64,000 nt of DNA, taken from the IMG/VR virus record IMGVR_UViG_3300035698_022190, positions 1-64,000 of that record. One strand, given 5' to 3'. The translations under genes were made by a program, and so were the position numbers. The notes under the pieces are model-generated. The model saw nothing but the letters and a program-made list of their open reading frames with translations. It made no database searches and had not been told where the DNA came from. Shown piece after piece: positions 1-64,000 of this stretch; positions within the stretch are counted from its first letter, which is position 1; each line of letters opens with the position of its first letter.

Positions 1-870
1 CAGGAACATCGGGTACAGATGGGACATCAGGAACATCGGGAACATCCGCTACAAATGGAACATCGGGAACGTCTGGAACATCCGGAACATCCGCCACAGA
101 CGGAACATCCGCCACAGATGGAACATCAGGAACAGCCGGAACATCCGCCACAGACGGAACATCAGGAACAGCCGGAACATCTGGAACATCGGGTTTAGAT
201 GGAGAAGTGGCAGCACAAGGTCTCCCCGGAACGAACGGAACATCTGGAACATCGGGAACATCGGGAACATCCGCTACAGACGGAACGTCGGGAACATCAG
301 GAACATCCGGAACATCCGCCACAGACGGAACATCAGGAACATCGGGAACATCCGCTACAGATGGGACATCAGGAACATCAGGAACATCCGCTACAGACGG
401 AACATCTGGAACATCGGGAACATCCGGAACATCAGGAACGTCCGCCACAGATGGAACATCGGGAACATCGGGAACATCGGGAACATCCGCCACAGACGGA
501 ACTTCGGGAACATCTGGAACATCAGGAACATCGGGAACATCCGCTACAGACGGAACATCGGGAACATCGGGAACAGACGGAACATCAGGAACATCTGGAA
601 CATCGGGAACTTCGGGAACGTCTGGAACATCCGGAACATCAGGAACGTCCGCCACAGACGGAACAAATGGATCTTCAGGATCATCGGGAACATCAGGAAC
701 ATCTGGAACATCTGGAACATCCGCCACAGATGGAACAAATGGATCATCAGGATCATCTGGAACATCAGGAACGTCTGGAACATCTGGAACATCTGGAACA
801 TCCGCCACAGATGGAACAAATGGATCATCAGGATCTTCAGGATCATCCGCCACAGACGGAACATCGGGAG
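1..870 (+). repeat. Coding 9-nt tandem repeat (GGAACATCN) encoding Gly-Thr-Ser
   Basis: Visible directly; variation falls mainly at wobble positions, so the repeat is coding. Confidence 0.9.
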
Positions 871-1199
871 TTGATATTACCGAGGAGTATACTACTGTTA
901 ACCCAAGTGTAGGAGTAGTAACTTTAAATTTTAATAATGGTCCAAACTTTAAATCATTAATGTCTGGAGTAGTAACTATTAATCCATCAAACGAGGCAAC
1001 CAATTTAGGTAAAAGTGGAAATTTAATAATAACAGGAGATACGGGAGGTATAACTTCTATTACATTAAATGCTGAGTTTAAAACACCTTTAGGTCAAACA
1101 CCTTCATGAGTATTAACACAAGGTGCAATATCTATATTAACATATATAGTAGTAGATGCTTCAACAATTCTAGTTAATTACATGGGTAATTTTAGCTAA
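3..1199 (+). CDS. Collagen-like (Gly-Thr-Ser)n fibre/decoration protein, 5'-partial; one TGA read as Trp
   Basis: Frame 3 is open from the window start with GTS/ATD triplets. Reading TGA 1107-1109 as Trp completes the C-terminal domain ([40 protein letters not shown]) to TAA 1197-1199, which overlaps the next ATG (TAATG). Confidence 0.8.
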
Positions 1200-1843
1200 T
1201 GCAACGTTTTGGTTTTATTCAAAAATATGAGTGAGAAACGAGCTTTAGTACTGATATACAAACTAGTACGACGTCATTATTAAACACTACGACTACTTGA
1301 GAAACTAGTCGCTCTACAACTACTACATATCAAACATCTCATAGCACAACAACGGCTTATGATACAAGCATATCCACGACGACTACGTGACAAACATCTC
1401 ATAGCACTACCACATCATACAATACAGACACGAGTACGACGACTACGTGGGGAACATCTCATAGCACTACCACATCATATAATACAGACACGAGTACAAC
1501 AACTACGTGACAAACATCTCATAGCACTACCACATCATATAATACAGACACGAGTACAACAACTACGTGAGAAACGTCTCGAAGCACAACTACAACTTGA
1601 AATACTAATGTTTCAACGATAACAGTACGAGCGACTCTTAGATCAACGCAAGAGCCAGCTAATACAACAGTGGAAACAAGCAGTAGTTATAATACATATT
1701 GGAATACAACAAGTACCAAAAATACACAAAGAGAAACAAGCACTTATACAGAATATGAGACTGAATGAACAACATACTGAAATACCACAGTTCAAACAAA
1801 TACTGTAATATTTTGAACTAAAGGATCAGGGATAACACAATAA
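1199..1843 (+). CDS. Thr/Ser-rich repeat virion protein 1 (214 aa, 9 TGA=Trp)
   Basis: [16 protein letters not shown]..., with 20-aa repeat STTTTWQTSHSTTTSYNTDT. TAATG coupling at both ends. One repeat copy has TGG (1448) where the others have TGA (1388, 1508, 1568). Confidence 0.8.
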
Positions 1844-2454
1844 TGATTGAATATACATATGAAACTTGGTTAACAGGAACCCTGGTAGAGACATCTAACG
1901 TAACAGATGTTTGAACAGGACGCACAACATATTGGGATACTACTGTTAATACTATTACCCAATGACAAACTAGTAAATCAACTACTGTATATTGAAATAC
2001 TCAAAGAAGTACTAACCATGCAACAAATACATGGGTTAATACCAATGTTAGTACTATTACTTTAAGAAGTACAAATAGGTCTACGACCACATTATTTAAT
2101 ACAAGCGGGTCCACGACGACTACGTGACAAACATCTCATAGTACAACAACGGCTTATGATACAAGCATATCCACGACGACTACGTGACAAACATCTCATA
2201 GCACAACAACGGCTTATGATACAAGCATATCCACGACGACTACGTGACAAACATCTCATAGCACTACCACATCATATAATACAGACACGAGTACAACAAC
2301 TACGTGAGAAACGTCTCGAAGCACAACTACGGCATATAACACTAGCCATAGTACCACCACAGCATTTAATACAAATACATCAACAGGTACTTTCACCACT
2401 TTTAACACAACCACAGCTTGACAAACAAGCAGAACCACAAATTTTTATGAATAA
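1843..2454 (+). CDS. Thr/Ser-rich repeat virion protein 2 (203 aa, 8 TGA=Trp)
   Basis: MIEYTYETWLTG...TTTTWQTSHSTTTAYDTSI repeats...WQTSRTTNFYE*. Shares the 60-nt repeat with the upstream gene. Confidence 0.8.
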
Positions 2455-3376
2455 AAAAATTCAAACACAAATGTTTGATGACAAAGAACAGACTAAACGT
2501 TTAGGTGATTTAAAGAAAAACGTTGTTTTGTTACATCTGGAACAGGTAGAATTATATCTCTTAGAGGTATTAAAAGAATATAAAATTGATTGCGCTTATG
2601 ATGTAACCGCGCGTGAATTGCCATATTTTAAAACTTTAGGTTATACAGAATATGGAACAAACTTAATTTTAAACCCCTTAAACTTAGAGCTTAGATCTAC
2701 ACAAATTAAAGAGGCTATTTTAGATACTCCCGAAACTATATATGATTATACTACATATTTAAAAAATAATATACTTAAAAAACAGGCTAATAAATATCAG
2801 GATAGAGAAAATTTAACAGGCGCTTATCCAGCTGTAAAAAACATTGTTGTTTTGCCCGGATCTAATAAATTAAAAGATAAGACTTGCCTTAACAAATTAA
2901 TATACATAAGTAAATTGCATGAAGGCAATATATATTTTAAACCGCACCCTTTAACTAAGCATTTTATGATTGGGGAGCTAAAAGATCTGTTTGGAGAACA
3001 TGCCATCTTGCCGAGAGAGGCAGATTTATATGAATTTTTAGTGCAAGCAGATAAAGTATATACCACACATATAAGTGAATCAGCTTTATACGCAAGTGTC
3101 CTTGGCAAAGAGATTGAACCTATAGATGTTTATAACCATTTACAAGATGGATCCTTTTATCATATAAATAGGTTTTTATTTGAAGAGCAGTTATATAATA
3201 GAGACCCTTCAATATGAATAAATAAAACTTTTTCCAGTTATAAGTCAGGGATTATAAATCCAACCGTAGATTTAAACTGAAAAGATAAGGTAGATAATTA
3301 TCTCGAGTATATAATGGGTATTCGAAATAGATATAAAAATTGATATATTGAGAAGTCTAAAAAAGAAAAAAAATAG
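2447..3376 (+). CDS. Putative glycosyltransferase-like protein (GT-B/capsule-biosynthesis-like), 309 aa with 3 TGA=Trp
   Basis: Starts MNKKIQTQMF. Motifs VVLPGS, YFKPHP and ADKVYTTHISESALYASVLGK resemble KpsC/KpsS/sialyltransferase-type GT-B domains. Read-through extends it to TAG 3374-3376. Confidence 0.55.
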
Positions 3377-3438: not shown

Positions 3439-3615
3439 ATGAGAATAGTACGGGATCCTTTTGTTGATTTCCCCAGTACGACATTGAATAAAATAAGAGA
3501 AGAAGTAAAAATGCTTGCAGAGCGTTTTTTACGACAAAATGGCCTACCTACATTAGGCATTAATGTTACAGAAAATCTGCAGGATTTTTTATTTCCACGG
3601 GTAAATATTAGATAA
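3439..3615 (+). CDS. Hypothetical protein (58 aa)
   Basis: MRIVRDPFVDFPSTT...FPRVNIR*. Follows the promoter and is TAATG-coupled to the next gene. Confidence 0.6.
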   Translation: MRIVRDPFVDFPSTTLNKIREEVKMLAERFLRQNGLPTLGINVTENLQDFLFPRVNIR

Positions 3616-4478
3616 TGGCTACCACAGGAAATATAAGTTTAGATATAAAATATATCTTCATTAGTTTTGCACAACAATTATTTGCTACACATGGACTGTA
3701 TACATGAAATACAAACCCCATTGAAACAAAGATAATAATTGCTGATAAAAATGCTGTTGATTTAGGTATAGTAGCTAAACGACCTTCAATTATTTTATCT
3801 CGTGGCGGCTTTTCGTTTATGAAATTAGCGATCAACCAACGAGCACCATCCAAAGATTTCGTTCATTTGGACGGAACACAAAATTTAGTAGGACCTTTAG
3901 GATCTGCAGATGCTTCAAAAAACGCTGTTTTTATGGACCAAATACAAGGTTCAGCAACATTTAATGTTTTATCAAAGCAGGGTATACAAGCAGAAACTAT
4001 TGCTAACGAGCTATACATGGCCTTAGTCGGATATAAAGAAGATATAAGGGCTAAGGGTATGGAAATTAAAAATATCTCATTTGGCGAAGAATCCATGCTT
4101 AAACATACTTCAGAAATTGAAGTATCGGCTATAGCCATCGGAGTTCAATTTACTAAAACAGTAAAAGTAGCTCGCGGTGAAAAACAAAATAATTGTTTAG
4201 TTTATCAAGATGGTACGGAAGTTAAAGAAGGTATACATTTTAGAGTGGCAACGGCAGGCACACAAATTGTTTTTGAAGATGCCCCTGCAACGGGAACAGC
4301 TTTAACATTAACATATGTACATGCCATAACATTAGCAACTCATACATCAGTAACTTTAATAGGTACTGTTGACGGATCAAACAAAACTTTTACAGTCCCG
4401 GAAAGTGGAGTAATTTATGGTTATTATACATTATTAGATTCCGTAGACATAACTATTAATGATGCAACTTATGATTAA
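3615..4478 (+). CDS. Putative tail completion/neck protein (287 aa, 1 TGA=Trp at 3705)
   Basis: MATTGNISLDIKYIFISFAQQLFATHGLYTWNTNP... joins the 3819-4478 ORF in frame. Position upstream of the sheath; KRPSIILSRG resembles tail-terminator-like proteins. Confidence 0.55.
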
Positions 4479-5463
4479 ACTTTCAACATATCAAATTGAC
4501 GAAGCCCTGCTTCAAGGTTTTATTGAAGAAATGAATGATATGGAAAAAACTGCTGGACCATCAAGTTTCGCTGCAAAAACACTTTATAAACTACTTGGCA
4601 AAGCTCGCTTAGGCTTACGTAGGGCGGGACGGGGCGGAAAAGCTATGGACGTAATGTTTAGACGCGGACGTGCAGGGTATAAAGCAGGCGGAGGACGAAG
4701 TATGCTAGGGGAAATGGGCAAGTTTAAAAACCCACTTTATTATGCTGGAAGCAAAGAAATACCTAAACATCATGAATTATTAAGACAACGTTATGAAGGT
4801 TTAGGTGCAATGTTTAAATCAATGCCACAAGGCGCAGTTAGAAGTCTTGGAACAACTTCTCAAAAACTTTTTGATTTAACTAAAGGCATGTCAGGTAAAG
4901 GTGGAATTTTTAAAAACACTGGAAGATTTATTAAAAATATGCCAGGTGTAATGGCCAAAGATGTAGGTGCAAATTTTAGATATAAAGAGCTTCTAGGTGT
5001 TTCAGATAAAATAAAATCTGGCAGAATTTTTATGAAAAAAGATGGTATTATTTTAGATGCAAAAAAAGCTTTAAAAATTTATACAAAAAACCCAGATAAA
5101 GCGGTTACTAGTTTACATTTAAGACCAGCATGGAGAAAGAAAGGGGGAACAGCCTTTTCTAGACCATTAAAGGGTAATACAGGAATAGGAGCAGCTGTTA
5201 GAAAGCGTACACAAACAGGTGTAGCAATGGCAGCTTTCTCAGGTCCTGGAATGGCTGCGACCACTTACTTAGGCAGTAAAACTAAAGAAGATGGTACCCA
5301 AAATAGCCAGCTAAAAAGAATTGGAATGTCCGCAGGTGAGTTAGCCTTGTGGGGTGTAAATCCCGCCATAGGAACTGCAGCCATGATTGGACACGGTGCT
5401 CTCAATTTATTGAAAAAACCGAAAAAGCCAAAACAACCAGAAACAATACAACAATTACTTTAA
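4471..5463 (+). CDS. Basic Gly/Lys-rich protein, possibly internal virion/ejection protein
   Basis: Acidic N-terminal leader ending MEKTA, then a very basic G/K/R/M-rich body and hydrophobic C-terminal helices. Function inferred. Confidence 0.5.
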   Translation: MIKLSTYQIDEALLQGFIEEMNDMEKTAGPSSFAAKTLYKLLGKARLGLRRAGRGGKAMDVMFRRGRAGYKAGGGRSMLGEMGKFKNPLYYAGSKEIPKHHELLRQRYEGLGAMFKSMPQGAVRSLGTTSQKLFDLTKGMSGKGGIFKNTGRFIKNMPGVMAKDVGANFRYKELLGVSDKIKSGRIFMKKDGIILDAKKALKIYTKNPDKAVTSLHLRPAWRKKGGTAFSRPLKGNTGIGAAVRKRTQTGVAMAAFSGPGMAATTYLGSKTKEDGTQNSQLKRIGMSAGELALWGVNPAIGTAAMIGHGALNLLKKPKKPKQPETIQQLL

Positions 5464-5510
5464 TAAGTAATTAATAATTAATAAATGCAATATTATTGGA
5501 GGAGTCATTA

Positions 5511-7118
5511 ATGGCGTACACCAAACCGGGAATTGAAGTTTCACAGATACAGGAAAGCACAACGCCGACCCTTATCACGCCCGATTTAGAGGCTGTCGTA
5601 GTTGGAGAATCTAACTACTGGCAACCAATGACAGAAGCAACAGGTACGTACTTAACAGCGGCTCAGACTGAAATTGCTGTAAGTGGTATTAATTCTTCAT
5701 TCCCAGATGTTACTGGACACAATGCCTTAGTGCTTGTTGACCTATTAACAGCAACGGGCGTAAGAAAACCACTCGTAAAAGATACAGATTTTACTATTTC
5801 GACAGTTGAGGGCTATTCTACTATCACTCTTGTTAGTGGTATACAGGTAGCGAGCGCTGATGTTACAACAGCAGCTGCTGTTTATGTAGGATATCGCGCA
5901 GATAATATAACTGGCCGTGGTTTTAAAACTCTTGAATCTTTAACTGATGTTCAGAATTTATATGGAACTATTAATTCGTGGAATCCATTAGCTTATGGCT
6001 CTGCCTTAGCTTTGGATAACGCAGGTTCTTCTATAAATGCTTATGGAATAAGTGGTATAACCTCGTCAGCAAGTATCTCAGCAGCGTTAAGTGACCTAGA
6101 AGCTCGCGAAGTGTATTCAATGTCTTTGTTAGATCAAAAGTATCTTTCAAGTACAGCGACTACATTAAGCACTCACGTTACAACTCAATCTTCAGCAATC
6201 AACAAGAAAGAACGTATTGCGTTTGTATGTAAAGCAACCGAGTTCACCGGTACAGCCTACTATGAGAGTAGTTCTGATAAAGCAACCACGGCAGCCGCCG
6301 TGCAATTAGCTAATATTGCCCATGGCAATAAGCGCTTTTTCAGTGTATTCCCAGATGTAGCCTTTATCGAAGAATCTCGCCACATTTCAACAATAGATCC
6401 AACCTGGATCACTGCAAGTTTTGCAAACACTTCAAGTGTAGGTTTTGGCACTGGAGATCTTGTTTGTATGTTTAGAAACAACACTACCATTAACGGTATT
6501 GCTTATCTAAAAGGACAAAAGATCACCAGCACTGTTTATACCGCCATCAAAGATTACATTTTAAGTGAAGACTTGACATTGTTAGTATGGGCGCCAGTTC
6601 CTGGCTTCTATCTAACTTCAGCGATTGCAGGTCAAGTTGCGGGCAAAGACCCACAACAACCTTTAACCAACGTACCTATCGGCGGTTTTGCCAAAACAAA
6701 AGGATCCAATGACTATTTCTCAGAAGCCAACCTAAACACAATGGCTGAAGGTGGAACTTATATTGTTAATGAACTTACTACAAACTCACTAATATGTAGA
6801 CATCAGGTTGCAACAGATATGTCGAGTATTGCTAAACGTGAATTAAGTGTAACAAATGCACTCGATTATTCTGCAAAGTTTATTCGAACTGCTTTCTCGC
6901 CTTATATAGGGCGATACACAATCAGTCCTTCGTTTATTAAATTAGCTAACACCATTTTAGTTGGTATTGGCATGTATTTAAAACGCGAAAGGAAGATTAA
7001 TGATTTACAGGTATTATCGATAACACAGGACCCAATAAATCCTGACACGTTACTCGTAGAAGTAAATATTCTGGTGAAATATCCAGTTAATTACATAAAA
7101 CTAAAATTATTATTTTAG
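5511..7118 (+). CDS. Tail sheath protein
   Basis: GGAGG RBS; starts MAYTKPGIEV; sheath-type C-terminus (PQQPLTNVPI, RELSV, LVKYPVNYIKLKL); immediately upstream of the tube gene. Confidence 0.9.
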   Translation: MAYTKPGIEVSQIQESTTPTLITPDLEAVVVGESNYWQPMTEATGTYLTAAQTEIAVSGINSSFPDVTGHNALVLVDLLTATGVRKPLVKDTDFTISTVEGYSTITLVSGIQVASADVTTAAAVYVGYRADNITGRGFKTLESLTDVQNLYGTINSWNPLAYGSALALDNAGSSINAYGISGITSSASISAALSDLEAREVYSMSLLDQKYLSSTATTLSTHVTTQSSAINKKERIAFVCKATEFTGTAYYESSSDKATTAAAVQLANIAHGNKRFFSVFPDVAFIEESRHISTIDPTWITASFANTSSVGFGTGDLVCMFRNNTTINGIAYLKGQKITSTVYTAIKDYILSEDLTLLVWAPVPGFYLTSAIAGQVAGKDPQQPLTNVPIGGFAKTKGSNDYFSEANLNTMAEGGTYIVNELTTNSLICRHQVATDMSSIAKRELSVTNALDYSAKFIRTAFSPYIGRYTISPSFIKLANTILVGIGMYLKRERKINDLQVLSITQDPINPDTLLVEVNILVKYPVNYIKLKLLF

Positions 7119-7129
7119 GGAGATAAAAA

Positions 7130-7759
7130 ATGGCTAATGTAAATGTATTAGGTGATTGGAATTTTTTGGACGGTAACGTTCAAAAGATCGACGATGGCAG
7201 CGATTTCTTATCAGCAGAATCTACTGTAATTTGTGCCGGACCACCGGACCTTGGTGCATCAATTCAAAGTGTAAGACCTGTAGGACTAGTGCAGAATGCA
7301 CAAATTACACAAAATAAGCAGATTCAACAGCTGTTCGAAATTGGATCGCGTAAACCGTTCTTCATTCCAGGAAGAACTTTAATACAACTCGGAATGTCAA
7401 GAGTGTTATTTGATGGGGCCTCATTAATGCGTGCGTTATATGAGCACGATGAGCTTCCAGGCGTAACAGACAACTATAATGCCGATGTTATTCCACCAGC
7501 TGAGCCTTACGGTCCAGCAACATCCAGTGATTTTTATATGAATTTAGCTTCTGAATTCTTTAATCGTCCTTTAGGTTTAGCCTTCATATTACATGATGGT
7601 CAAAATCAAAAGTATGGCGGTTTCTATTTAGAAAATTGTTATATTCAAACACACGGAATGTCAATGGCGGGACAGCAAACAGTGTTATTAGAAAATGTAG
7701 GTATCCGAGCAAGTAATTTAGTTCCTTTGGACTATGATGAAAGTGCAAGCGCAACCTAA
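7130..7759 (+). CDS. Tail tube protein
   Basis: Follows the sheath; VGLVQN..QQLFEIGS..FFIPG and LENCYI tube-fold motifs. Confidence 0.85.
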   Translation: MANVNVLGDWNFLDGNVQKIDDGSDFLSAESTVICAGPPDLGASIQSVRPVGLVQNAQITQNKQIQQLFEIGSRKPFFIPGRTLIQLGMSRVLFDGASLMRALYEHDELPGVTDNYNADVIPPAEPYGPATSSDFYMNLASEFFNRPLGLAFILHDGQNQKYGGFYLENCYIQTHGMSMAGQQTVLLENVGIRASNLVPLDYDESASAT

Positions 7760-7807: not shown

Positions 7808-8548
7808 TTAAATTAAGTGCGTATGCTTTAAATCATGTATAAAGTCTTTTACGACTACAGAAAGCTCGTTCACATTATGGGCTTTTAGTATTCGGTCTGG
7901 TTTTGTGTCATTTAAATCAGCTTCGGACGGATGATTAGGATCTCTGTCTGGTGCAACAAAACGTGTATTATCATCGTTTAGTCTGACCACATCAACATAA
8001 ACCCCGCCCGCGTCTTGTACGGCGGAAGCTTCATTTCTAAAGCGAGTATCCGCAACACATATCCACACTAATCCATCATAATTTTTATTTTCTTCAGCAA
8101 TACGATCAATATCTTCAAAGGTTCGCTTCACCCAATAATTATTTCCAAAATAAGTGCGTCGTAAATCTGTACCCCAAAGTTGAAGTAATAAAGGATCTTT
8201 ATCTAACATATATAAATATCTAAAACCATCTCTATTTATATTTCCTAAAACTAGATCTTTAAAATCGGGCAATTCTTTATGTGTAAATTTATCATAAATT
8301 ATTGTTCGAGTTTTACCAACAGTCTTCACACTTTTTAAACACCAAACTTCTTCATTATTTATTTTACACAAAGGCATTTCATGCTCTTCATACTCTTTGT
8401 TTCTAACTTCCTCATACAATTTATCAGCCCAATGAAGAATATGTACATTAGGTTCTAACTTTTTTATTATCTCTGCTGTGGTATCTTTGCCATTTCTTGC
8501 CTTAGATCCTAATCCAAGTAAAACAACATTTTTAGCCAGTTTAGCCAT
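7808..8548 (-). CDS. Deoxynucleoside monophosphate kinase
   Basis: P-loop GLGSKARNGKDT, LLQLWGTDLRR, ADTRFRNE and HPSE motifs of the phage dNMP kinase family. Confidence 0.85.
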   Translation of the reverse strand: MAKLAKNVVLLGLGSKARNGKDTTAEIIKKLEPNVHILHWADKLYEEVRNKEYEEHEMPLCKINNEEVWCLKSVKTVGKTRTIIYDKFTHKELPDFKDLVLGNINRDGFRYLYMLDKDPLLLQLWGTDLRRTYFGNNYWVKRTFEDIDRIAEENKNYDGLVWICVADTRFRNEASAVQDAGGVYVDVVRLNDDNTRFVAPDRDPNHPSEADLNDTKPDRILKAHNVNELSVVVKDFIHDLKHTHLI

Positions 8549-11423: not shown

Positions 11424-11431
11424 ATTAATTC

Positions 11432-53508: not shown

Positions 53509-55563
53509 ATGGCTAACGAATCAGGTCGTATAAAAGTACCATCAGGAACTAAACAAAACTTAGAAACGGTTTTTGATGATCTCCAATCCTATGCAGCCGA
53601 AAACTTAGAGCGACGTATACTAAAAATCTTTGATACTTTTGGCCCCGTAGTCTCCGTAAATGCTGGAATAGTTACCGGCACAGATTTACAATTAAGTAAA
53701 GGATCCGGTTTAAATATAACAGTTGCAGCCGGAGAAGCGCTTTTAACAGATGGAACTTTAATTCGTCTAGATTCTGGAGGGGCGGAAACATTAACAAGTG
53801 TCTCAGCTGCAACAGAATATGTAATTACTTTAAAATACGCTGAAGCAGGAGAGACTCCTATAACTGCACAAAATGCCTTCTTATATGACACTACCGGTGC
53901 AACTTTATATTCCACAAAATATACACGCTATACAGATAGTTACTCAATAGAACATACTGAAGTAGCAGATTTTGCAGCAATTGCCACGCACATAGCTTCA
54001 AATCCGGATGAAGTTCCAGTTGGTATTGTAAAAACTAATGTCGGGGGAGATGGTTTTGAGACTGTCTTTACATTTGATACAAAAGCAGCTGTTAGTGGTG
54101 TGGTTGAGGCACGACATATATACTCTTTAAAAATTAATCCAGAAGTTATAGATGATGCCGATATTGTATTTACAGATAGAGATTCAGATATTGATGGTGA
54201 CGTAACAGTAAATGCTTTAACAGCTGACTCCGCCTCAATAACAGGGGCATTGGCAGCAGGAAGTATTTCATCTGCAAGTGTGCATGGAACAGCATTAACT
54301 GGAAATACAGCAACTGTATCCGGGCTAGGAAATTTTGGAAGCTTACAAGTGGGTGGAGTAAGTGTTCAATTAGACGAAGGAACCCCAACCGTTCCTGCTA
54401 ACTTAAGAATTTGAGATATCTGACCAACAGATAATCCTTCAGAACCTTGCGGAAATATATGGTTTCGCTGAAATTACGATGAGTTACTTACAGGAGGAAC
54501 TGCTGTATATGGTGGAGTATCTACCATTGTAAAAATTTCTGTACTAACTGGAGATGATGAAGCTTTTAGTCCGACTTCTGATGATGTAGTGGGAAAATAT
54601 TTAAAATTTGCAACAAACTCTTATCCCATCACGGCAAAAGGAACAGCTACGGATGTCTATGTACCAATTACGGTAACCGGAGATGCGTCTGGCGAAAGTT
54701 GGGTAACTCGTCCTAAAATAATTGATAACAATGTAGATGGCTATTATATAACTATCGCCCGAAATCCAGATAGTGCCTATAAATTAGTTTCTAACTTGGA
54801 TTCTTCTTTTGTTACCGCGCCTGAATTTAAAACTAAGCTAGACTTGGGCCAACAATATAATGTTAGTATTAAAACTTATAATGACACTGCGAAGTCAGCA
54901 GACTCTGATTTAATAACAGGAACTTTTGACCCTGATCAAGGAGGTACTGATCAAGCTGATGTTTCATTCGCTAACCCATTTACAATGCAACTTCCTGATA
55001 TATATGATGATGGTAGTTTAAATATTAGTACCACTGCAAACGGAGTAGTATTAACCGTTGGTGGATGAAATAGGGGCGGACAGCAAGATGTACATGAATA
55101 TGAATATGTATATAAAACCGGATTGACAGAATCTTTGTCAGCTTTAGCGGATGTGGGCCGAAACTACACCCATGTTATATCCCCTTCACCTACACACAGT
55201 ATAGTTGCGAATGAAGCAACAACCTTTTCATGTGGTGTTAGAGGGCTTCAAAATAAACAAGTTGTAACTGAAGATGTTTTTACAGAATCTACCGCAGGTG
55301 GTTTTGCAGGAGAACCTGTACAAGATAAAGTATTACTACAAAAAGTAAATGCCGAAGTTAAAGTAAGGCGAGGCACAATAGGAGGGCCAGGGGCAACATC
55401 TGGCTCTAGTGATGAATGAACCGCAGTTGTTGAGGATCCCGTTAATCCATTATTGTTTGTTTCTGTCGGGGACGGTTTTTTAGAAGGTGAATATTTAAAT
55501 ATTAATGGTGAAGATTCACGAGATTATAAAATTACTAGACAAAGCTTAAATATTACTGAATAA
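53509..55563 (+). CDS. Tail fibre/baseplate attachment protein (684 aa, 5 TGA=Trp)
   Basis: LNITVAAGEAL..DG fibre N-terminal motif; the 53509, 54589 and 55123 ORFs are in frame to TAA 55561. Confidence 0.65.
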
Positions 55564-55569: not shown

Positions 55570-56121
55570 ATGGCTATTACACATCCAATGACTCTAGATG
55601 GATCATCTTCTTTTCAGCCGGGCGAAGATAAGCCCTTTACAATAGGAATGAGACAACCTGGTAGGGTTATAATGAAAAAGCAGTTAGACAGAGACTACAC
55701 TTTAACAAGGCTAGATTTTGAATTAAAAGCTGGGAAGTTTATAACTGATTTAATTCCAGCGGTTATTAGGATATATCAAAAAGACCATGAAACAGATGCA
55801 GCATATTTAATTTTACCAAGTGGCGTACAGCGAACTTATGTATCTGGTGCAGATCCAGATAGTGTAGTTCATGATGATACTTTAAATCAATACTCTCTTA
55901 CCTTAAGTTTAGAAATTACATCTAAAGAAGCCACTCGTGAGGTCATTGTGGATGCTTTCTGCCCTTTAACGTGATCTGGTTGAACTGCCAATGGAGGAAG
56001 CTATGGAGTTTTTGGCCCTGATCATGACGATGGGCCACTAGTAGGATTGCACATAAATTCACAACCCATTAAAGGAGATTTACAAATTTTCGGTAGACCT
56101 TTACACGATATACCAACTTAA
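55570..56121 (+). CDS. Virion protein, paralogue A (183 aa, 2 TGA=Trp)
   Basis: Aligns with the next gene (KPFTIGM, LTRLDFE, VIVDA, HINSQP..G.LQIFGR) once TGAs are read through. Confidence 0.7.
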
Positions 56122-56142
56122 ATTTATTTATAGGAAAAAACA

Positions 56143-56622
56143 ATGGCATTAAATATTGAACATCGAATTAATTTAGGCGGATCTGAAAGCTATGTGCCTA
56201 CTACAGAAAAACCATTCTCAATAGGTATGACACAGCGTGGTCGCCGAATTATGCATAAAACTTTTGAGCAGGACCAAGTGTTAACTAGAATAGACTTTGA
56301 GGTTATGAGTGGTAAATTTTTATCGGCCGCTACACCTGCAGTTCTGCGTGTATATCAATCTGGCACCGCAACCGATGCAAGATACTTGGCATTAACAGGA
56401 ACTGGGTCTTTTTCAACAGAAATTACTCTAAATATTGTTGATCGTGGGTATAATCGCACAGTAATAGTTGATGCTTGGGCGCCGGTTTCATGGCCAGGCT
56501 GGGGATCAGAATATACTCAAATAGATGCGTCAACACAAGCTGTGGGTGGACATATAAATGCACAACCTTTCACAGGACATCTACAAGTATTTGGTAGAGC
56601 GCTGACTTCAACCGTTTCATAA
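56143..56622 (+). CDS. Virion protein, paralogue B (159 aa)
   Basis: KPFSIGM, LTRIDFE, VIVDA and HINAQPFTGHLQVFGR shared with the upstream paralogue. Confidence 0.7.
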   Translation: MALNIEHRINLGGSESYVPTTEKPFSIGMTQRGRRIMHKTFEQDQVLTRIDFEVMSGKFLSAATPAVLRVYQSGTATDARYLALTGTGSFSTEITLNIVDRGYNRTVIVDAWAPVSWPGWGSEYTQIDASTQAVGGHINAQPFTGHLQVFGRALTSTVS

Positions 56623-56631
56623 TTTTAATCT

Positions 56632-59600
56632 ATGGCAACTTATAAAGGCAGATTAGATCCCGAAAAGACAAAAGCTTATCGAGGAATATTAACTTACATC
56701 TTTGACATTAATGGTCATCGTGTAGGTGTAGATGCAACTGATGACTATGGTATATATGAGTTCTCAGGACTTGAAACGGGTTGACATCGTATTACCTTCT
56801 TAGGGGGCAATTATGATGAAAAGGATACCATCGATGTTTTTGTAACTTCTACTCCCGGAGATCCAGATTCTGTTGGTCGCTTTAGTGGAACTCCCACCTT
56901 AGAAGTATATGAGGAAGGTTATACTTATACAAGTGGAAATAATATTGATTCAGCGGAATCCTATGCTCGTGTTAATATATCAAACCTAGCTCTGTCTCAA
57001 GGTACTTTATCCGATGTAGTTTTACATTACCGTGATAGTAACCAATCCCTCCCAAGTTTAGAAGGTCTGACTATTGCTTGTGTTGGAGATAGTATTACTG
57101 TAGGTATGGATCCTGCACAAGAAGCAGACGAAGATTATCCTTCCCAATTAGAAGCTTTAATATCTGGTGGCACTACTGTCAGTAATTATGGCGTCTCTGC
57201 CAAAACAATGACTACAACCTTATCAGGTATCTCTTATAGAGAAACCGATAGCTACACAAATGCTTTAGCTGCAGAAGCTGATGTGTATATTGTTGGGCTT
57301 GGAATGGGTGATGCTAATCATTGATCTGAGGTTAGCGCGGATTTTTTAACTGACACAATTTCCTTATATGAATCTCTAAAAACTCCAACAAACGTTGTTT
57401 TATTTAATAAATTAACTCCTTCTTTTTACACGGGTATTACTAATACCACTATAGGGTATGCAAACAGTTTCTTAGCTAATGCAATGGCTTCTGTAGGAGC
57501 TCCCGCCCCTATAGATTTACACAGTGATATGATGGAGCATGAAGACGATTGATTTATTCCTGGTGATATACTACATCCAAATGTTGCGGGCAACACTTTT
57601 ATGGCCGGAAAAGTATATGAAAAATTAGAAAGTCTTGTTGTTTTAGATCGTCCTGCTGTCTCTGGATTAGGAACACCTGCGACTATTTCTGGTTGGACTG
57701 AATGATTTACAATGGCCTATAGCACAAATTCAGACGATGTAGAATCTAACGGGGATATAATAGTATCAAAATCTTTAACACTACCAACAATTCCCTTTAA
57801 TTCTGATTTTAGGGCAACCTTTATAGATGACACAGGGAGCTGAATTGAGGATGAAGATACCGATGAAATAGTACATGCGTACGACTATGATGTAACCTTT
57901 GGTCAAGTATTAGACAATACTCCTCCCGAAATTGATTCTGATAAATTCTATATAGACGCTGATAATAATCCAGATACGCCTGCTATTAGAAGCATCAACA
58001 CATCAACTGGATTTTTAATTAGTAAGCAAGGGGCAATAACGGATTCAATTTCAGAGGTCACGAAAATTTTTGCTCAACCCGCTTTATTTAGCTATAGCAC
58101 GGTAATCACTTCTACAAATGAGGGAAATACTTCTTGAAATGATTCTGATTTAGTTGATTGAAATGTAGGAGATTTAGCAGGATATTATATTCTTGATAAA
58201 AATTATGAGACATGAAAAATTATTAGTTTTGCATCTGGAGCAGGAACCATTACTGTTGCGGGAACTGGCGTAGTAATAAATAGTTTCTATGCTATTATTA
58301 AATGACTTGGAACAGACCATGATCTAATTAGCTCCTTATGAGATTATGAATGAACTTATAATGATGGTGGTGGATACCCGATTGCTTTTAGCGGACCTGA
58401 CATACTATCAAGACCTACTGAATGATTAAAACCAGGATTTGCTACTTCAAAATATGGTTTTATAGTTACTGGGGCGGATAAACATAAGAATATCGTAACT
58501 AGTTTTGCAGATATGGCGATGCCCGACATTAAAGTGGGGAATCCTGCTTTCGGCGGCACCACCGAAATGAAATGATATTTTTGGGATGGAAGCGAAATCG
58601 CTAGGCCCAACTCTTACGATCCAGTATATGGGTGGTACAATGACGCCGATTTATATTTACGATTAGAGGCCCGAGTGGGTTATGAGTTGGCTCATGCTGC
58701 ATATCAAATTTCTGAAGCTGATGGAAGTTGGGACCCCGATGTGTTCTACCCTGTGGCCGCGATAGATGGATATTGTGACATACCATTATTTGAAGGTGTT
58801 AGGACTATTCAATTTACTTATGCGTTGACCGGGGTAAATGGTGTTGATGAGCATTTAACGTGATATACAAAACCGTACCAATGGGACAAAACAGCTCCAG
58901 AATGGAGTCCTACTGGAAAATCGTTATCAGCCGGATTTAATGAATTACTGGTTTCTTGGACTGGGGATCCGCCTTCAGACCCTGAGCCAAGTGTTGGAGG
59001 AAGCGGGGAAGCTAGTGGTCACAAAGGTTTTAGGGTATACTATGGTCCCGGTGGTTTTGAAGGTACTACCATTCTGGATTATGGAAGCTCCACTACATCA
59101 TTGACTATCCCGGCAAATTATAATACACCCACATGTGTCTGGGTAGCTGCAAGGGATCACGCAGATAATTTTGGAACACCCGAAGAATTTGGATGTGCTA
59201 CGGCAGCCCCAATTGTACGTGCAGATGTAGATGGGGCTCTTAGAATATTTTCTTCAAGTTATCCTTTAATATCAGGACAAGATGCCCATGTTTGGCAAGA
59301 TAGGTACGGTATAGCTGTTCCTATAGAAAGTTGTTCTATTACAATGCCAGCCGGATTAACAGGGGCACCAGAATTGTTAAGTATCCAGTATGCTGCAAAA
59401 GCTGATGCACTAGACCCAGTTATTAGTGGGCTGGGCTGAACAGATGTTACTGATGACAACATGACAGATGGAACAGGAAATCCTGGCGACGTAATGCATT
59501 TTGATGTGGACCGGGGGGAAGATGTTGAAAAACATTTAACAGGAACTACTGGTTTTTCTTTCGAAACAGGAGCTGTTGCAAGGGTATATACTTTCCGATT

Positions 59601-62600
59601 CGATCCTGTACAAGACAAATATTTCTGAAGAGCGGTCTTTAAGCCAGGACAAGTTTTAGTTGATGTAGGTACTAGCACAGGAATTTCAACAGAATTGAGT
59701 GAAGTTTATGATGTGCATTTTAATAGTATTCTCGCAGCAGATTTAATTGTTGGTGGAGTATTACGTTTGGAAACAGGCCTATCTATATGAGGCAAGACCG
59801 GTGAAGTAGGGATGACTATATCTCAAGATGGTTTATCTTTTTATGACCATTTAGATTCTTCGGCTGGAACTGCCGGTCCCGGCGCAACAAAAACAGTTGA
59901 TATTGATGGAAATACGGGAGATTTTGTTTTCGGAAAAGATTACGGAGCTTACGAAGACCAATCTTATTTGAAATGGGTTGATGGGGCTGTTGAATTACGT
60001 GGTAATTTACGACTATTAAATGGCTCGGAAATAATAAGCCCTATTAACTATGTAGGGGCCTGGAGCGCTACATATACTGCAGATAACGGTATCAATTATT
60101 TAGTAAATGATGCAGTTTCTTTTTGAGACTCAGAGACAGAAATAACAAATCAATATATTTGTATTGAAGAGCATGAATCAGCTTTGCTAAAAGATCCTTC
60201 TAATGCAACATATTGAGAACAATTAACTGGATCTACACCTGTATTCTCTTATTTTATAAAACCAGAGGGTGGAACTGCAATTAAGAATGGTATAGGAACT
60301 CTTCCTTTAGTTGCCACACAACATGGAGCTTTAGGCCAGTTTCCTATAGAACCCGATCACAACCCGTTAGCATTACAGCTTTATACAGATGATGATGAGA
60401 GTCATGGTACGGAGTGGACGGTAAGTGGGATAGATATAGATAATAGTTTAGTAGTATACTTAGCAGATGCTATCATTTCAGCGCCCGGTGCTACTATTTA
60501 TGACACCATAACTCTTTCAGATATTTTAGATGGGGATGACCCTACACAGGGGTCTATCATAACAAATAATGGTCTTGCTTTTACAAAAGGATTAGATCAC
60601 GAATGGGTGCCCGCGGCTGCTTCTACAAATTTAGCTTCTGTATTTTATAGAGCAGGGGTTCAAATTGACACATACTTAAGAACCGTGACACTGACTGAAG
60701 GGGACGGAACATTAGATGCCGTCGAAGGTACCAGCTCTAGTGGTTTTATTACAATGACTAAAGAGAATGGCGGAACTTCTACCATAACTTTAACATTTAC
60801 ATATAATGATGGTGTGCATAGTCCGGTTTCTGTTTCTGAGAATGTAATATCTGTTCAAGCTGGAGAAGATGCCCAATCAATGAGTATAACTGCCGAAAGA
60901 CAAGTTTTTACTTACCATACTGACGATCAGTTATATACAATTGGTACATCTATAATTACAGCGACAGCGCGTATTATAAATTTATTTGCCCCAATTCCAA
61001 CATTTTATTACACCTTTAAAAAAGGTGTAACTGTCCTTCAAGCAAGTTCAGTCGATAATACATATCAATATACAGCACAGGCAGATTATGGAGACATGCC
61101 CGAAACGATAACTGTGGAAGCTGCATTGTCAGCGGGCGGGGAGGTAATGGTTACCGAAGAAATAGACATGTTTGGAGTAAAAAATGGCTCAGATGCGGTT
61201 ACAGTGGTACTTACTAATCCAACACATACTTTTGCTGTTTTCGGAAACGGTGATATTGAATATGCAGGATCGGGTACAGATATTCGGGTATTTCTTGGGG
61301 CATTAGCATTGGATTATGATGCGGCTTTATCGGTCGCCAATACATTTAAAGTTACTGTAACAGACGACACTGATATAACAGTTGATTCAAGTCCAACACC
61401 TGTTGGCGATTATACTATTCGATATGGGCCTGCTAGTGGTTTTAATACCAATGCTGATACTGCTTCCATCACTTTTGAAATAACTATTTCAGATGAAAAT
61501 AAATATCAAAGAGGCCCATTCACACAAATACAAACATTTGCACCTGCCAGAGAAGTAACTTATAAATACTTTTTGAAGCCACTTAATGGTACGGCCATAA
61601 AAAATGGTACTGACACATTAGACGTTCAAGCTTTTCGTGTGACTCCGAGTGGGGAAGAAGAGCTTGAAGCAGGAAACCCCGAAGGCTTAGCTTTATATGC
61701 ATCGGATAGTGATACACCGCACGCAGAGGGCTCTCCTAGTGTAATTAAATGGACTGGCATCGACGATACCGACATTAATGGTAATATAGACCTATGGCTA
61801 GCTGATGGCGTACCATCCAGCGTTCCTACGAAATATGATACAATTACATTGGTGGATATCACTGACGGGGATGATGCTACAACAGGTTTTATCGAAGGTC
61901 TTCCATTAGCTTACTCACAGGAACCAAATGGTGGTGATTGGTCAAATGCTGGGCCAACAACTTTAACGGCTTATTTCTATAGATCCGGAGTAGAGCTACA
62001 AACCATGATTAAAAGTGTTGTTTTAAATCAGGGTGACGGAACTTTGTCTGCAACTGGGGGCACTGTTGGTTATATTACTTGTATAGTCCATAATAATGCT
62101 TCAACAGCTATTACGCTAGAATTTCAATTTGATGATAGTATTGGAAACCCAGTTACTGTCGCAGAAACAGTTTCAACTGTTGTTGGGGGAACTGACGGAT
62201 CTTCGGGATCTTCTGGCTCAAGTGGGTTGGCTGGAGCAGAGGGTGCAGAAGGAGCTGCAGGCGTGGACGCAAGGACAGTATCTTTAACAACAGACAAGCA
62301 AGCTTTTGAATATTTAACAAGTAATGTACTAACTGGGACTACTACATGTACATTGACTGCAACTGCATTAAATACTACAGGAACAGTCTACTATCAATTT
62401 TATAAAACACCAAAGGGCGGTGCCGCCAGCTCAGTTCAAAATTCAGCAAGCGCTACATATATATATACAGCTAATAGTTGGTACCCTGATATGCCCGAAA
62501 CAATGGAAGTACAAATACGCGAGGGTGCGGTTACTGGACCAATATTAGCGCGTGATTCAATGACTATGATGGCCATTAAACCGGGTACAGATGGCGACGA

Positions 62601-63999
62601 TGGTCTAGATGGTACAACTGTTTTAGTAACTAACGAAGCCCATTCTTTACCGACGACTAGCGCAGGCGCAGTAACTTATACAGGTTCCAGTACTTATATT
62701 AAAGTTTGAATAGGAACTACTGCAATCCCAGTTGATCTTGTATCTAGCTATGCTTCCCCATCATTTAGAGTTACTGCAGCAGGTACAGGTATTACAGCGG
62801 GAGGAATCTGACAGGATAGCACTTATGTTGTTGGTGTTGGTAATGCAAGTGCGGTAACCACAAACCCAGCCACAGTAAATTTAACTATAACAGTAAAAGA
62901 TGCAGCAGGCACAGAAATTGTATATACCAAAATTCAGTCCCTTTCTCAATCTATTGAGGGTGATACGGGCGGAGCAGGAACTGCGGGCGATCCAGGTACT
63001 AGAGGGTCCTTACATTTTGAGGGCAACACTACAGAGATTTTGTGAACAAACGCCGCAGCAGAAGTAGTTATTGCTGATGCTATTGACGATGGTATTATTA
63101 CCGCAAAACAGAATCTAGATTCAGTTACTTTAAAAAATTCTGGTGTTGGGAGTTGAGACGGTTTTTGGGACACTACACAAAGTCCGGACGATTGAACTGT
63201 AGTTGAATACTATATGAATGGAAGTTTACTTGTGCAAGGAACTGTAACTGCCGCAGCACTAAACGCTGATAGTATTTTTTCAAAAGATTATACTCTAGGT
63301 ACTAATGGCTCTATTAAAACCAGCGGACGCGCTTATGGTGCAGCTTCAGCTGGTATATATTTAGGTAATGCTAGTAGTACGAGTAAATTAGATGTAACAA
63401 GTGCGAGTGGTACAAATTACATGCGCTGAGATGGGGCAAAATTTTCAGTTTATGGCGACGGTATGTGAATAATTGATTCATCGTCGGGACTAGTTGATGG
63501 TCCCATGTTAACTAGACATGTAGGAGATAGTCAAGGAGAGATCTTTACAAGCACTTCTACATCTTATGCTAAAAAAATGCAAGGTTCCTGTATATTAAAT
63601 TCTTTAGATACTAAAATTACTTGCGCTTATAGAGGATATAATTTAACTAATGATGCTGAAGGAAGGGTATGATTTAAAGTTTACTCTATTAACAACACCG
63701 TAACAGGATATAATACTGAGGTTGCAGCTGAAAGTGGTTGATTTGGAAACGGGGAAAGCACTACTAGCTGTTTTGTTGGAAATACACCAATTACTTTAGC
63801 TAGCGGAGAACAAGAATATATTAAATTTATAAAACCTGGAGATCTAGTACTTGGAAAGGATAATCAAATTAATGAAGTACAATCTATTCTAACCCCTACC
63901 CTTGGAACACAAACCTTATATAGAATAAATAAAAGTTTTCCTTTTGTAACAGGAGGACACCCATTTTGAACACAAAACGGCTGAAAAGTTATTGATCTA
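56632..63999 (+). CDS. Giant multidomain tail fibre/adhesin (>2450 aa, about 30 TGA=Trp, 3'-partial) with SGNH esterase, FN3/Ig-like repeats and a Hint domain
   Basis: Frame 1 has no TAA/TAG from ATG 56632 to the window end. GDSIT..YP..NYGVS..DILHPN near 57070-57600; CFVGNT Hint start at 63769. Confidence 0.8.
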
Positions 64000-64000
64000 G

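What the first reader, a model, noticed from the sequence alone, without database searches (positions are those of the whole stretch)
1..64000. TGA is reassigned to Trp, but only in virion and lysis genes; replication genes are code-neutral
Seen: about 80 in-frame TGAs join fragments into coherent structural genes on the + strand, which then couple by TAATG overlaps. Three internal controls identify Trp. (a) One 60-nt repeat copy has TGG at 1448 where the others have TGA (1388, 1508, 1568). (b) Paralogue A CPLT*SG* (55972, 55981) aligns with paralogue B APVSWPGW (TGG 56491, 56500). (c) The Hint motif HPF*TQNG*K matches HPFWT..GWK. In the 28-kb minus-strand block every gene I checked ends in TAA/TAG and uses TGG for Trp, except the holin. 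Known: stop-codon-recoded phages infecting standard-code hosts, with recoded codons enriched in structural/lysis genes, have been reported. Inference: the host uses code 11 and the phage switches code late in infection.
Basis: partly seen in the sequence, partly recalled or inferred. Interest (0 to 1): 0.85.

Follow-up and report, generated by a model that had tools for sequence, protein, structure and literature searches.

The report
TGA-to-Trp recoding in phage virion genes
A 210-kb salt-lake phage spells about 60% of the tryptophans in its virion genes with the stop codon TGA while its replication genes stay readable in the standard code (a known phage strategy), and it reads TGA with an unusual tRNA that carries a second, tryptophan-type anticodon arm.

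Summary
The window is the first 64 kb of a 210,208-bp IMG/VR phage genome from salt-lake metagenomes. About 82 in-frame TGAs lie in + strand virion-module genes (3-4478 and 37393-64000). The 28-kb minus-strand replication and nucleotide-metabolism block has none inside genes, against 112 TGG. In orthologues from two related phages, 13 of 14 discordant TGA sites face TGG (Trp) and one faces Tyr, so TGA means Trp. The genome has no RF1/RF2 and no TrpRS. It does encode a tRNA(UCA) at 65786-65883, 1.8 kb past the window and directly upstream of a TGA-free endolysin. All of this matches the late-gene recoding that Borges et al. described, so the finding as written is a new member of a known kind.

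The new element is the tRNA. It is a tRNA-Trp derivative with a 22-nt insertion that adds a second hairpin, whose 7-nt loop reproduces the CCA anticodon loop. About 40 IMG/VR phage contigs carry this architecture with strong covariation. Many long phage tRNA(CUA) carry a CUG/UUG (Gln-like) loop in the same position. I found no description of either in the literature I could search. That the extra arm works as a decoy for the host synthetase is my inference and is untested.

The parts
3..1199 (+). 3' part of a collagen-like (G-T-S repeat) protein gene that runs off the contig start; 1 in-frame TGA
   Evidence: Translation. The same repeat is at the other contig end.
1196..1843 (+). Ser/Thr-rich protein made of 60-nt repeats; 9 in-frame TGA, one per repeat, with TGG at 1448 in the same register
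1822..2454 (+). Second Ser/Thr-rich repeat protein; 8 in-frame TGA
2447..3376 (+). Protein of unknown function (the start is approximate); 3 in-frame TGA near the C-terminus
   Evidence: No Pfam hit.
3612..4478 (+). Gene with 1 in-frame TGA
4459..7759 (+). Three + strand genes (4459-5463, 5496-7118, 7130-7759) without TGA (7 TGG); function unknown
7808..36380 (-). Early, replication and nucleotide-metabolism block. It has no in-frame TGA inside any gene examined, 112 TGG, and all stops are TAA/TAG. Genes: dNMP kinase 7811-8551, DNA pol A part 9447-10601, sigma-70 factor 10614-11456, RNR 17990-19978, epimerase 22264-23106, AAA_24 27750-28721, MBL 29392-30183, AEP primase 30144-32876, deformylase 33706-34314, LAGLIDADG 34314-34994, helicase 35007-36377.
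37393..40464 (+). 1024-codon virion gene, tape-measure-like (language-model lead only); 4 in-frame TGA
40466..43897 (+). 1143-codon virion gene; 3 in-frame TGA. This is the orthologue pair used to identify the amino acid.
43897..45048 (+). Gene with 2 in-frame TGA; its start overlaps the previous stop (TAATG)
45051..45767 (+). Sigma factor (Sigma70_r3, phrog_351) inside the tail module; no TGA and no TGG at all
45767..48468 (+). Two genes (45767-47944 with 2 TGA; 47944-48468 with 1 TGA)
48478..51534 (+). Baseplate J-like wedge protein; 6 in-frame TGA. This is the second orthologue pair.
51501..55563 (+). Three genes (51501-52979 with 3 TGA; 52954-53493 with 1; 53494-55563 with 6 and a weak fn3 hit)
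55570..56622 (+). Paralogue pair: A (55570-56121) has TGA at 55972 and 55981; B (56143-56622) has TGG at 56491 and 56500
56629..64000 (+). Giant fibre-like protein with a GDSL/SGNH-like motif, repeats and a C-terminal Hint domain from about 63742. It has 30 in-frame TGA inside the window. The gene ends at 64398, outside the window. The decoding tRNA(UCA) lies at 65786-65883, outside the window (= L030:9786-9883).
   Evidence: tRNA

Best explanation
The window belongs to a roughly 210-kb tailed phage written in two dialects.

Genes needed before and during replication contain neither sense nor stop TGA, so a standard-code host can translate them. These are the minus block 7.8-36.4 kb, both sigma factors, the RNA polymerase subunits and the endolysin.

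Virion-module genes spell about 60% of their Trp codons as TGA. A full-length product can only be made once UGA is decoded.

Decoding is by a phage tRNA(UCA) encoded 1.8 kb beyond the window, between the virion module and the endolysin gene. The phage has no TrpRS and no release factor. The host TrpRS must therefore charge this tRNA, and the tRNA must outcompete host RF2.

The tRNA is a tRNA-Trp derivative. It has A1-U72, G73, a Trp-like D arm, and resembles the phage's own tRNA-Trp(CCA). A 22-nt insertion duplicates the anticodon arm. Arm 1, in the anticodon position, has the loop CUUCAAA. Arm 2, in the variable-arm position, keeps a 7-nt N-U-CCA-A-A loop.

My inference is that arm 2 presents the cognate CCA identity element to TrpRS, either in place or after the two arms swap. 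That would let the UCA suppressor be charged efficiently with Trp.

Shown: TGA = Trp, the module distribution, the tRNA and its conserved architecture, and the absence of RF and TrpRS.
Inferred: a standard-code host, the temporal switch, and the role of arm 2.
For: - TGA distribution.
- Trp identity: 13 sites with TGA opposite TGG in two relatives, plus the paralogue and repeat controls.
- Functions.
- tRNA(UCA). It scores below the Rfam gathering thresholds for both tRNA (24.2 bits against 29) and tRNA-Sec (32.5 against 47).
- No RF-1 domain and no class-Ib synthetase.
- The tRNA equals tRNA-Trp(CCA) plus 22 nt.
- Family of about 40 phage contigs.
- Covariation: 94.7% of cells paired against 68.4% in shuffles; score 0.687 against 0.184, with 0/500 shuffles reaching it; the extra arm has 5/5 pairs with double changes.
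- Less biased scan: all of about 36 non-selC long tRNA(UCA) keep U-CCA in the extra loop.
- Parallel in amber suppressors: 26 of 38 long tRNA(CUA) have [C/U]UG-A in the extra hairpin loop.
- Literature: the same module-biased TGA-to-W recoding, with only 35% of code-4 phages having a detectable suppressor tRNA. 13 of 13 tested phage tRNA(UCA) inserted Trp in E. coli extract.
Against: - The host is unknown. The nearest GenBank phages, by RNAP beta at about 33% identity, infect Salmonella and Vibrio. The host's code and the timing of expression are therefore not observed.
- The only identifiable lysis gene is not recoded, so a 'lysis timer' is not evident here.
- A long variable arm with G73 is also the SerRS identity set. 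Charging with Ser, or dual charging, cannot be excluded from sequence.
- The CCA loop was required by my first search pattern. The unbiased sample is small, and many sequences are related.
- In the Gln-type tRNAs the extra stem is only 3-5 bp, which fits a simple arm swap poorly.
- One TGA site faces Tyr in the relative.
Confidence: 0.8

Rival explanations
1. The phage and its host both use code 4 throughout (for example a Mycoplasmatota-like host), and the uneven TGA use is a composition or expression effect.
For: TGA aligns with Trp. No gene ends in TGA anywhere I looked. GC is low at 36.7%.
Against: In 28 kb of early genes, 0 of 112 Trp codons are TGA, against about 82 of 136 in the virion genes. 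A code-4 host gives no reason to avoid TGA there. The phage carries its own tRNA(UCA) as well as a tRNA-Trp(CCA). [quoted passage not shown]
Confidence: 0.05
2. TGA stands for another amino acid. It could be Gly (code 25, CPR hosts), or Ser, Sec or Cys because the tRNA(UCA) has a long variable arm and G73 like tRNA-Ser, tRNA-Sec and allo-tRNAs.
For: ARAGORN calls the tRNA SeC, and Rfam tRNA-Sec is its best though sub-threshold model. The long arm plus G73 is the SerRS identity set (Mukai et al.).
Against: 13 of 14 discordant sites face Trp and none faces Gly, Ser or Cys. The tRNA has a 7/5 acceptor/T architecture, A1-U72, and a D arm and T arm like tRNA-Trp. Genuine selC genes form a separate group. 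About 80 sites with no sign of SECIS-dependent insertion do not fit Sec.
Confidence: 0.04
3. The second hairpin of the tRNA(UCA) is not a synthetase decoy. It could be a tolerated relic of a duplication. It could also serve another role: structural stabilisation, an anti-determinant, a site for a modification enzyme, protection from anticodon nucleases, or a second functional anticodon reached by alternative folding.
For: tRNA-Trp(UCA) suppressors without an extra arm are charged with Trp in E. coli (Borges discussion; Seki et al.). About 19 class-I-length phage tRNA(UCA) hits exist. No geometry for recognition of a variable-arm loop by TrpRS is known.
Against: The stem sequence turns over completely while the CCA loop is kept, so selection acts on the loop. 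The retained triplet matches the reassigned amino acid in two independent systems: CCA with UCA suppressors, and CUG/UUG with CUA suppressors. TrpRS and GlnRS are both synthetases that read the anticodon.
Confidence: 0.4
4. The TGAs are true stops: decayed or fragmented genes, assembly errors, or low-level programmed read-through.
For: None beyond the formal possibility.
Against: All interruptions are TGA and in frame. They are conserved, or exchanged with TGG, in two diverged relatives at 61% aa identity. The joined ORFs couple by overlapping stop/start. Related DNA is present in 13 independent sequencing runs.
Confidence: 0.01

Closest known systems
TGA-recoded (code 4) phages with recoding biased to structural and lysis genes (Borges et al. 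2021/2022; clades such as Jade and Agate)
   Same: In-frame TGA = Trp is concentrated in virion genes. Replication genes are in standard-compatible code. The genome has low GC and a phage suppressor tRNA(UCA), and the tRNA sits next to the lysis gene.
   Different: The source is a salt lake, not a gut. The genome is 210 kb with its own multisubunit RNAP. It has no RF1/TrpRS 'code change module'. The endolysin is not recoded. There is no detectable protein similarity to GenBank phages for the virion gene tested.
Dual-coded crAss-like phages and Mgcod 'blocks' (Yutin 2021; Pfennig preprint 2022; Peters 2022)
   Same: The genome is divided into blocks that use, or do not use, a reassigned stop (abstracts).
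   Different: Those phages mostly reassign TAG to Gln and infect Bacteroidota. Here the reassignment is TGA to Trp in an unrelated lineage.
Ordinary tRNA-Trp-derived opal suppressors (class I, about 75 nt; for example Mycoplasma tRNA-Trp(UCA), E. coli trpT suppressors, many phage Sup-TCA)
   Same: UCA anticodon in a CUUCAAA loop, A1-U72, G73 and a Trp-like body.
   Different: A 22-nt insertion creates a second, covarying hairpin with a CCA anticodon-like loop. The total length is 93-100 nt, and the tRNA falls below the Rfam tRNA threshold.
tRNA-Sec (selC) and allo-tRNAs / selC* tRNAs (Mukai et al. 2017)
   Same: Long extra arm, UCA anticodon, G73. ARAGORN labels it SeC.
   Different: It has a 7/5 acceptor/T arrangement, not 8/5, 8/4 or 9/3. 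It has a Trp-like D arm rather than a 6-bp D stem. Its extra-arm loop is a 7-nt anticodon mimic, whereas true selC hits have stem-closed tetraloops.
AP1 TrpRS:tRNA-Trp(UCA) and the 31 phage tRNA(UCA) screened by Seki et al. 2025
   Same: Phage-borne UGA suppressors that insert Trp.
   Different: That work relies on a phage TrpRS for its orthogonal pair, and the text does not mention an extra arm. This genome has no TrpRS.

Membership tests
Stop-codon-recoded (TGA to Trp) phage with module-restricted recoding | Multiple in-frame TGAs inside otherwise intact, conserved genes | tested here: met
   About 82 sites. They are conserved or exchanged in relatives.
Stop-codon-recoded (TGA to Trp) phage with module-restricted recoding | TGA positions align with Trp in homologues | tested here: met
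   13 sites have TGA opposite TGG and 1 has TGA opposite Tyr. Paralogue control.
Stop-codon-recoded (TGA to Trp) phage with module-restricted recoding | Recoded codons enriched in structural genes and absent from replication genes | tested here: met
   The TGA share of Trp codons is 0/112 in the early block and about 82/136 in the virion genes. Functions.
Stop-codon-recoded (TGA to Trp) phage with module-restricted recoding | Lysis genes recoded | tested here: not met
   The Amidase_2 endolysin 65901-66503 has no TGA. No holin was identified.
Stop-codon-recoded (TGA to Trp) phage with module-restricted recoding | Phage-encoded suppressor tRNA for the recoded stop | tested here: met
   tRNA(UCA) at 65786-65883. 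Also present in the relatives.
Stop-codon-recoded (TGA to Trp) phage with module-restricted recoding | Host uses the standard code | not testable with these tools
   The host is unknown. The only evidence is indirect: the early genes avoid TGA entirely.
Jade-type 'code change module' (tRNA + TrpRS + RF1) | Phage-encoded TrpRS and RF1 | tested here: not met
   No PF00579 or PF00472 match in the 210-kb genome; the controls were positive.
tRNA-Sec (Rfam RF01852) | Score at or above the gathering threshold; 8-bp acceptor plus 5-bp T stem; 6-bp D stem | tested here: not met
   32.5 bits against a threshold of 47. The acceptor is 7 bp. It groups apart from true selC.
Canonical class-I tRNA-Trp | A1-U72, G73 and a Trp-like body | tested here: met
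   G73 is invariant and A1-U72 is present in 26 of 35 distinct family members.
Canonical class-I tRNA-Trp | 4-5-nt variable loop; CCA anticodon in the anticodon arm | tested here: not met
   The variable region is about 26 nt with a hairpin. The anticodon arm carries UCA.
allo-tRNA (Mukai 2017) | 8/4 or 9/3 acceptor/T-stem arrangement | tested here: not met
   The consensus structure is 7/5.

The most novel reading that the evidence does not exclude
Phage stop-codon suppressor tRNAs commonly carry an extra arm whose loop reproduces the anticodon of the amino acid being assigned. UCA suppressors carry CCA (Trp), and CUA suppressors carry CUG/UUG (Gln). This would be a built-in identity decoy, or an alternative anticodon arm, that lets the host's anticodon-reading TrpRS or GlnRS charge a tRNA whose real anticodon is a stop anticodon. 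It would be a general and so far undescribed molecular device behind phage code switching. It would also explain why standard tRNA finders miss many suppressors in recoded phages.
Probability: 0.35. Interest if true: 0.9.

Novelty: new variant of a known kind. Interest (0 to 1): 0.65.

Why it matters
The recoding itself extends a phenomenon known mainly from gut phages to a salt-lake jumbo phage. It gives a clean natural example in which early genes avoid TGA both as sense and as stop.

The tRNA bears on an open question stated by Borges et al.: how do recoded phages without their own synthetase get suppressor tRNAs charged by host enzymes that read the anticodon, and why are suppressor tRNAs undetectable in most recoded genomes?

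If the two-arm architecture acts as an identity decoy, it offers three things:
- a testable mechanism;
- a search model that should recover missed suppressors;
- a natural design principle for efficient suppressor tRNAs in genetic-code engineering.

Tried and rejected
- The Python box was lost. I therefore made no whole-genome gene call, no per-gene TGA map for 64-210 kb and no formal statistics. Counts come and from reading translations.
- Pfam and PHROGs gave no hit for most virion-gene pieces.
- tblastn of a 759-aa piece against GenBank phages found nothing.
- Terminase_6C and Phage_sheath_1 were not found in the genome, so the capsid and packaging genes remain unlocated.
- The promoter/terminator scan around the tRNA was uninformative.
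- The first amber-suppressor pattern was confounded by the TCTAA D-loop of ordinary tRNA-Gln. I replaced it with an unconstrained scan.
- The genome contigs pattern also caught true selC genes, where TCC-AAAA-GG is a stem plus tetraloop. I set these aside.
- Hint alignments end before the HPF*TQNG*K motif.
- The supplementary tRNA table of Seki et al. is not held.
- Six literature searches and checks of five papers found no description of an anticodon-like extra arm in suppressor tRNAs. This is absence in an open-access library only.
- Read laying was not used, because without scripts the variant table could not be mapped onto codons.
Full report
WHAT THE WINDOW IS

The window is bases 1-64000 of a single 210,208-bp IMG/VR virus record. 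CheckV rates it 100% complete, and its GC is 36.7%. Both contig ends lie in the same collagen-like G-T-S repeat, so the assembly broke inside a repeat gene. DNA close to it is held by 12 salt-lake metagenome runs and one marine run.

The genome carries about 27-29 tRNA genes and a tmRNA in a cluster at 95-108 kb. It also has two sigma factors and multisubunit RNA polymerase beta/beta'-like genes at 84-89.5 kb. By the RNAP beta-like protein, the nearest GenBank phages are Salmonella phage Arash and Vibrio phages D69, D181 and D148, at about 33% identity. The host is unknown.

CHECK OF THE OBSERVATION

With TGA read as sense, the longest ORF grows from 912 to more than 2457 codons, and same-frame fragments on the + strand join.

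Stop-to-stop ORFs bounded by TAA/TAG give these counts:
- + strand genes at 37393-64000: 60 in-frame TGA and 49 TGG.
- + strand genes at 3-4478: about 22 TGA and 5 TGG.

Neighbouring genes overlap stop and start at 43897, 45767, 47944 and 66503.

In the minus block 7808-36380, 33 ORFs of 120 aa or more hold 112 TGG. Six TGAs fall inside four of those ORFs, and all six lie upstream of the evident start codons. The small genes in the gaps also end in TAA or TAG. These genes therefore use TGA neither as sense nor as stop. I could not find the 'holin' exception.

The division follows modules rather than strands. These + strand genes have no TGA: 4459-7759, 36533-37383, the sigma factor 45051-45767 (which has no Trp codon at all) and paralogue B.

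WHICH AMINO ACID

Control (c) lies in a genuine Hint domain, but the database alignments end before the motif.

The stronger test came from relatives. One IMG/VR contig (L039/L085, 61% aa identity) is syntenic and likewise interrupted by TGA. A second relative, L043, is syntenic around the tRNA.

Results by gene:
- Gene 40466-43897: three of our TGAs face TGG in the relative, five of the relative's TGAs face our TGG, and one site is TGA in both.
- Baseplate J gene: four more TGA/TGG sites, five shared TGAs, and one TGA facing Tyr.
- Gene 66503-67585: its TGA faces Trp in L043.

In total, 13 of 14 discordant sites are Trp and the exception is another aromatic residue. None is Gly or Ser. TGG means Trp in every code, so this result does not depend on any assumption about the relatives' code.

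WHAT THE GENES ARE

The TGA-free minus block encodes an SF2 helicase, an AEP primase, a B12-dependent ribonucleotide reductase, a DNA polymerase A fragment with its 3'-5' exonuclease, a sigma-70 factor, an AAA_24 ATPase, a dNMP kinase, a peptide deformylase, a LAGLIDADG endonuclease and sugar-modifying enzymes.

The TGA-rich genes include:
- a Baseplate J wedge protein;
- a tape-measure-like protein, as a language-model lead only;
- collagen-like and Ser/Thr-repeat proteins;
- a 2589-codon protein with a GDSL-type motif, a tail-fibre PHROG hit and a C-terminal Hint domain.

Most of the other virion genes have no database match.

THE DECODING MACHINERY

The genome has no protein with an RF-1 domain and no TrpRS/TyrRS-class synthetase, and the control genomes were positive. 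It has an ordinary tRNA-Trp(CCA) at 102186-102257.

At 65786-65883 on the + strand it has a 98-nt tRNA with anticodon UCA. This gene lies between the virion module and an Amidase_2 endolysin gene (65901-66503), which itself has no TGA. ARAGORN labels the tRNA SeC. Rfam scores it below threshold for both tRNA (24.2 bits against 29) and tRNA-Sec (32.5 against 47).

Its features are:
- a 7-bp acceptor stem with A1-U72, G73 and an encoded CCA end;
- an anticodon arm with the loop CUUCAAA;
- a second hairpin in the variable-arm position, with a 5-6 bp stem and a 7-nt loop G-U-CCA-A-A, which is the anticodon loop of tRNA-Trp.

When aligned with co-resident tRNA-Trp(CCA) genes in six phages, the long tRNA equals tRNA-Trp plus a 22-nt insertion. 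That is the size of one anticodon arm plus a variable loop.

A CONSERVED FAMILY

A pattern requiring both loops found 48 IMG/VR stretches. ARAGORN reports a 93-100-nt tRNA(UCA) in about 42 of them, often beside a normal tRNA-Trp(CCA) and within large tRNA arrays.

In the 41-sequence alignment (35 distinct rows):
- the acceptor stems are very diverse;
- 94.7% of cells pair, against 68.4% after shuffling;
- the covariation score is 0.687, against 0.184 in shuffles (0 of 500 reach it) and 0.06-0.14 for slid partners;
- all five pairs of the extra arm show double changes.

The hits were:
- about 19 of class-I length;
- about 54 long ones. Of these, 31 were the earlier set, about 16 were true selC-type tRNAs with unrelated extra loops, 2 were chance, and 5 were new members of our type with loops UCCAAC or UCCAUA.

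So every non-selC long tRNA(UCA) seen keeps U-CCA.

The same type occurs in MAG contigs labelled Bacteroides, Prevotella, Treponema, Coriobacteriia and Bacilli. These are probably binned phage contigs or prophages. The bacterial selC genes that matched the pattern have TCC-AAAA-GG as a stem plus tetraloop.

A PARALLEL IN AMBER SUPPRESSORS

A scan constraining only a CUA loop and the T arm, at long spacing, found 93 stretches, mostly in 80-400-kb phage contigs.

Of 38 that I aligned:
- 26 have [C/U]UG followed by A in the loop of a short, variable-sequence hairpin in the extra-arm position. Examples are GCC-UUCUGAG-GGC and CACGG-CUCUGAC-CCGUG.
- 6 form a separate family with a UUG-containing segment.
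- 6 have nothing of the kind.

CUG and UUG are the Gln anticodons, and TAG to Gln is the usual phage amber reassignment.

MECHANISM

Shown: TGA = Trp, the module-restricted use, the tRNA, its architecture and conservation, and the lack of RF and TrpRS genes.

Inferred from the known biology of recoded phages:
- the host terminates at UGA;
- early genes are translated at once;
- virion proteins are completed only when the suppressor accumulates.

Inferred by me: arm 2 supplies the CCA identity element that bacterial TrpRS reads. It could do so where it sits, or after swapping places with arm 1. The junctions allow a swap: arm 1 has the canonical one-nucleotide junction to the D arm, and arm 2 has a canonical 4-nt spacer to the T arm.

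Support for the decoy idea:
- selection acts on the loop while the stems turn over;
- the retained triplet matches the reassigned amino acid in two systems.

Against the decoy idea:
- plain tRNA-Trp(UCA) can be charged;
- no structural precedent is known;
- the Gln-type extra stems are short;
- SerRS recognition of long arms cannot be excluded.

COMPARISON WITH WHAT IS KNOWN, AND NOVELTY

It is a new member of a known kind.

That paper notes that only 35% of code-4 phages had a detectable suppressor tRNA and suspected non-canonical structures. The two-arm tRNA, which falls below the Rfam thresholds, fits that gap.

I found no description of an anticodon-like extra arm in Borges et al., Seki et al., Mukai et al. 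or two crAss-related papers, nor in six full-text searches. This covers open-access text only. I therefore rate the whole as a new variant of a known kind, and I treat the decoy function as a hypothesis with about one chance in three of being both true and new.

Noticed in passing
G000:C1:65786-65883 (= L030:9786-9883), 1.8 kb beyond the window: A 98-nt tRNA(UCA) with two anticodon-arm-like hairpins: UCA in the anticodon position and a CCA mimic in the variable-arm position. It equals tRNA-Trp plus a 22-nt insertion. About 40 IMG/VR phage contigs carry the same architecture with strong covariation.
   Followed up: yes
IMG/VR loci, e.g. L237:1226-1316(-), L214:3000-3090(+), L228:7931-8021(-), L344:8337-8395(+); alignment A7: Long (about 90 nt) phage tRNA(CUA) often carry a short extra hairpin whose loop reads U-CUG-A or U-UUG-A (the Gln anticodons). 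26 of 38 sequences from a scan that did not constrain that region show this.
   Followed up: partly
G000:C1:65901-66503 (L030:9901-10503): The Amidase_2 endolysin immediately downstream of the tRNA(UCA) has no in-frame TGA and uses TGG for Trp. The next gene (66503-67585) has one TGA, which faces Trp in relative L043.
   Followed up: yes
G000:C1:67939-69537 (L030:11939-13537): A Volactin-family actin-like gene (Pfam E 2e-70) is followed by a gene with a mitochondrial-carrier (Mito_carr) repeat (E 2.9e-10). Both are unusual for a phage, and the pair is syntenic in relative L043.
   Followed up: no
window 45051-45767: A sigma-factor gene sits in the middle of the TGA-rich tail module and has no Trp codon at all (neither TGA nor TGG). 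It can therefore be translated in either code.
   Followed up: partly
G000:C1:84018-89465 (L031:9018-14465): Multisubunit RNA polymerase beta/beta'-like genes without TGA. The nearest GenBank relatives are Salmonella phage Arash and Vibrio phages D69/D181/D148, at about 33% identity.
   Followed up: partly
G000:C1:95541-107601 and 148557-148622: A tmRNA gene plus a cluster of about 27 tRNA genes on the minus strand. There is also an isolated tRNA-like element with a shortened anticodon arm at 148557-148622.
   Followed up: no
window 1-1199 and G000:C1:210149-210208: Both contig ends lie in the same collagen-like G-T-S repeat. The 'linear' record is probably a circular or permuted genome broken by the assembler inside this repeat gene.
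   Followed up: no
window 8572-10601 and 34314-34994: DNA polymerase A appears to be split: 9447-10601 holds the exonuclease and only the first part of the polymerase domain. A LAGLIDADG homing endonuclease gene lies between the helicase and deformylase genes.
   Followed up: no
window 49900-50000 region against L039 (Baseplate J orthologues): One TGA in the relative faces Tyr (KYN) in this phage. It is the only non-Trp counterpart among 14 discordant sites.
   Followed up: yes
IMG/VR loci L095, L096, L104, L113, L115, L120, L122 and others: Genuine bacterial selC-type tRNA-Sec genes occur on IMG/VR 'viral' contigs, presumably at prophage borders. They are easily confused with phage opal suppressors because ARAGORN labels both SeC.
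   Followed up: partly
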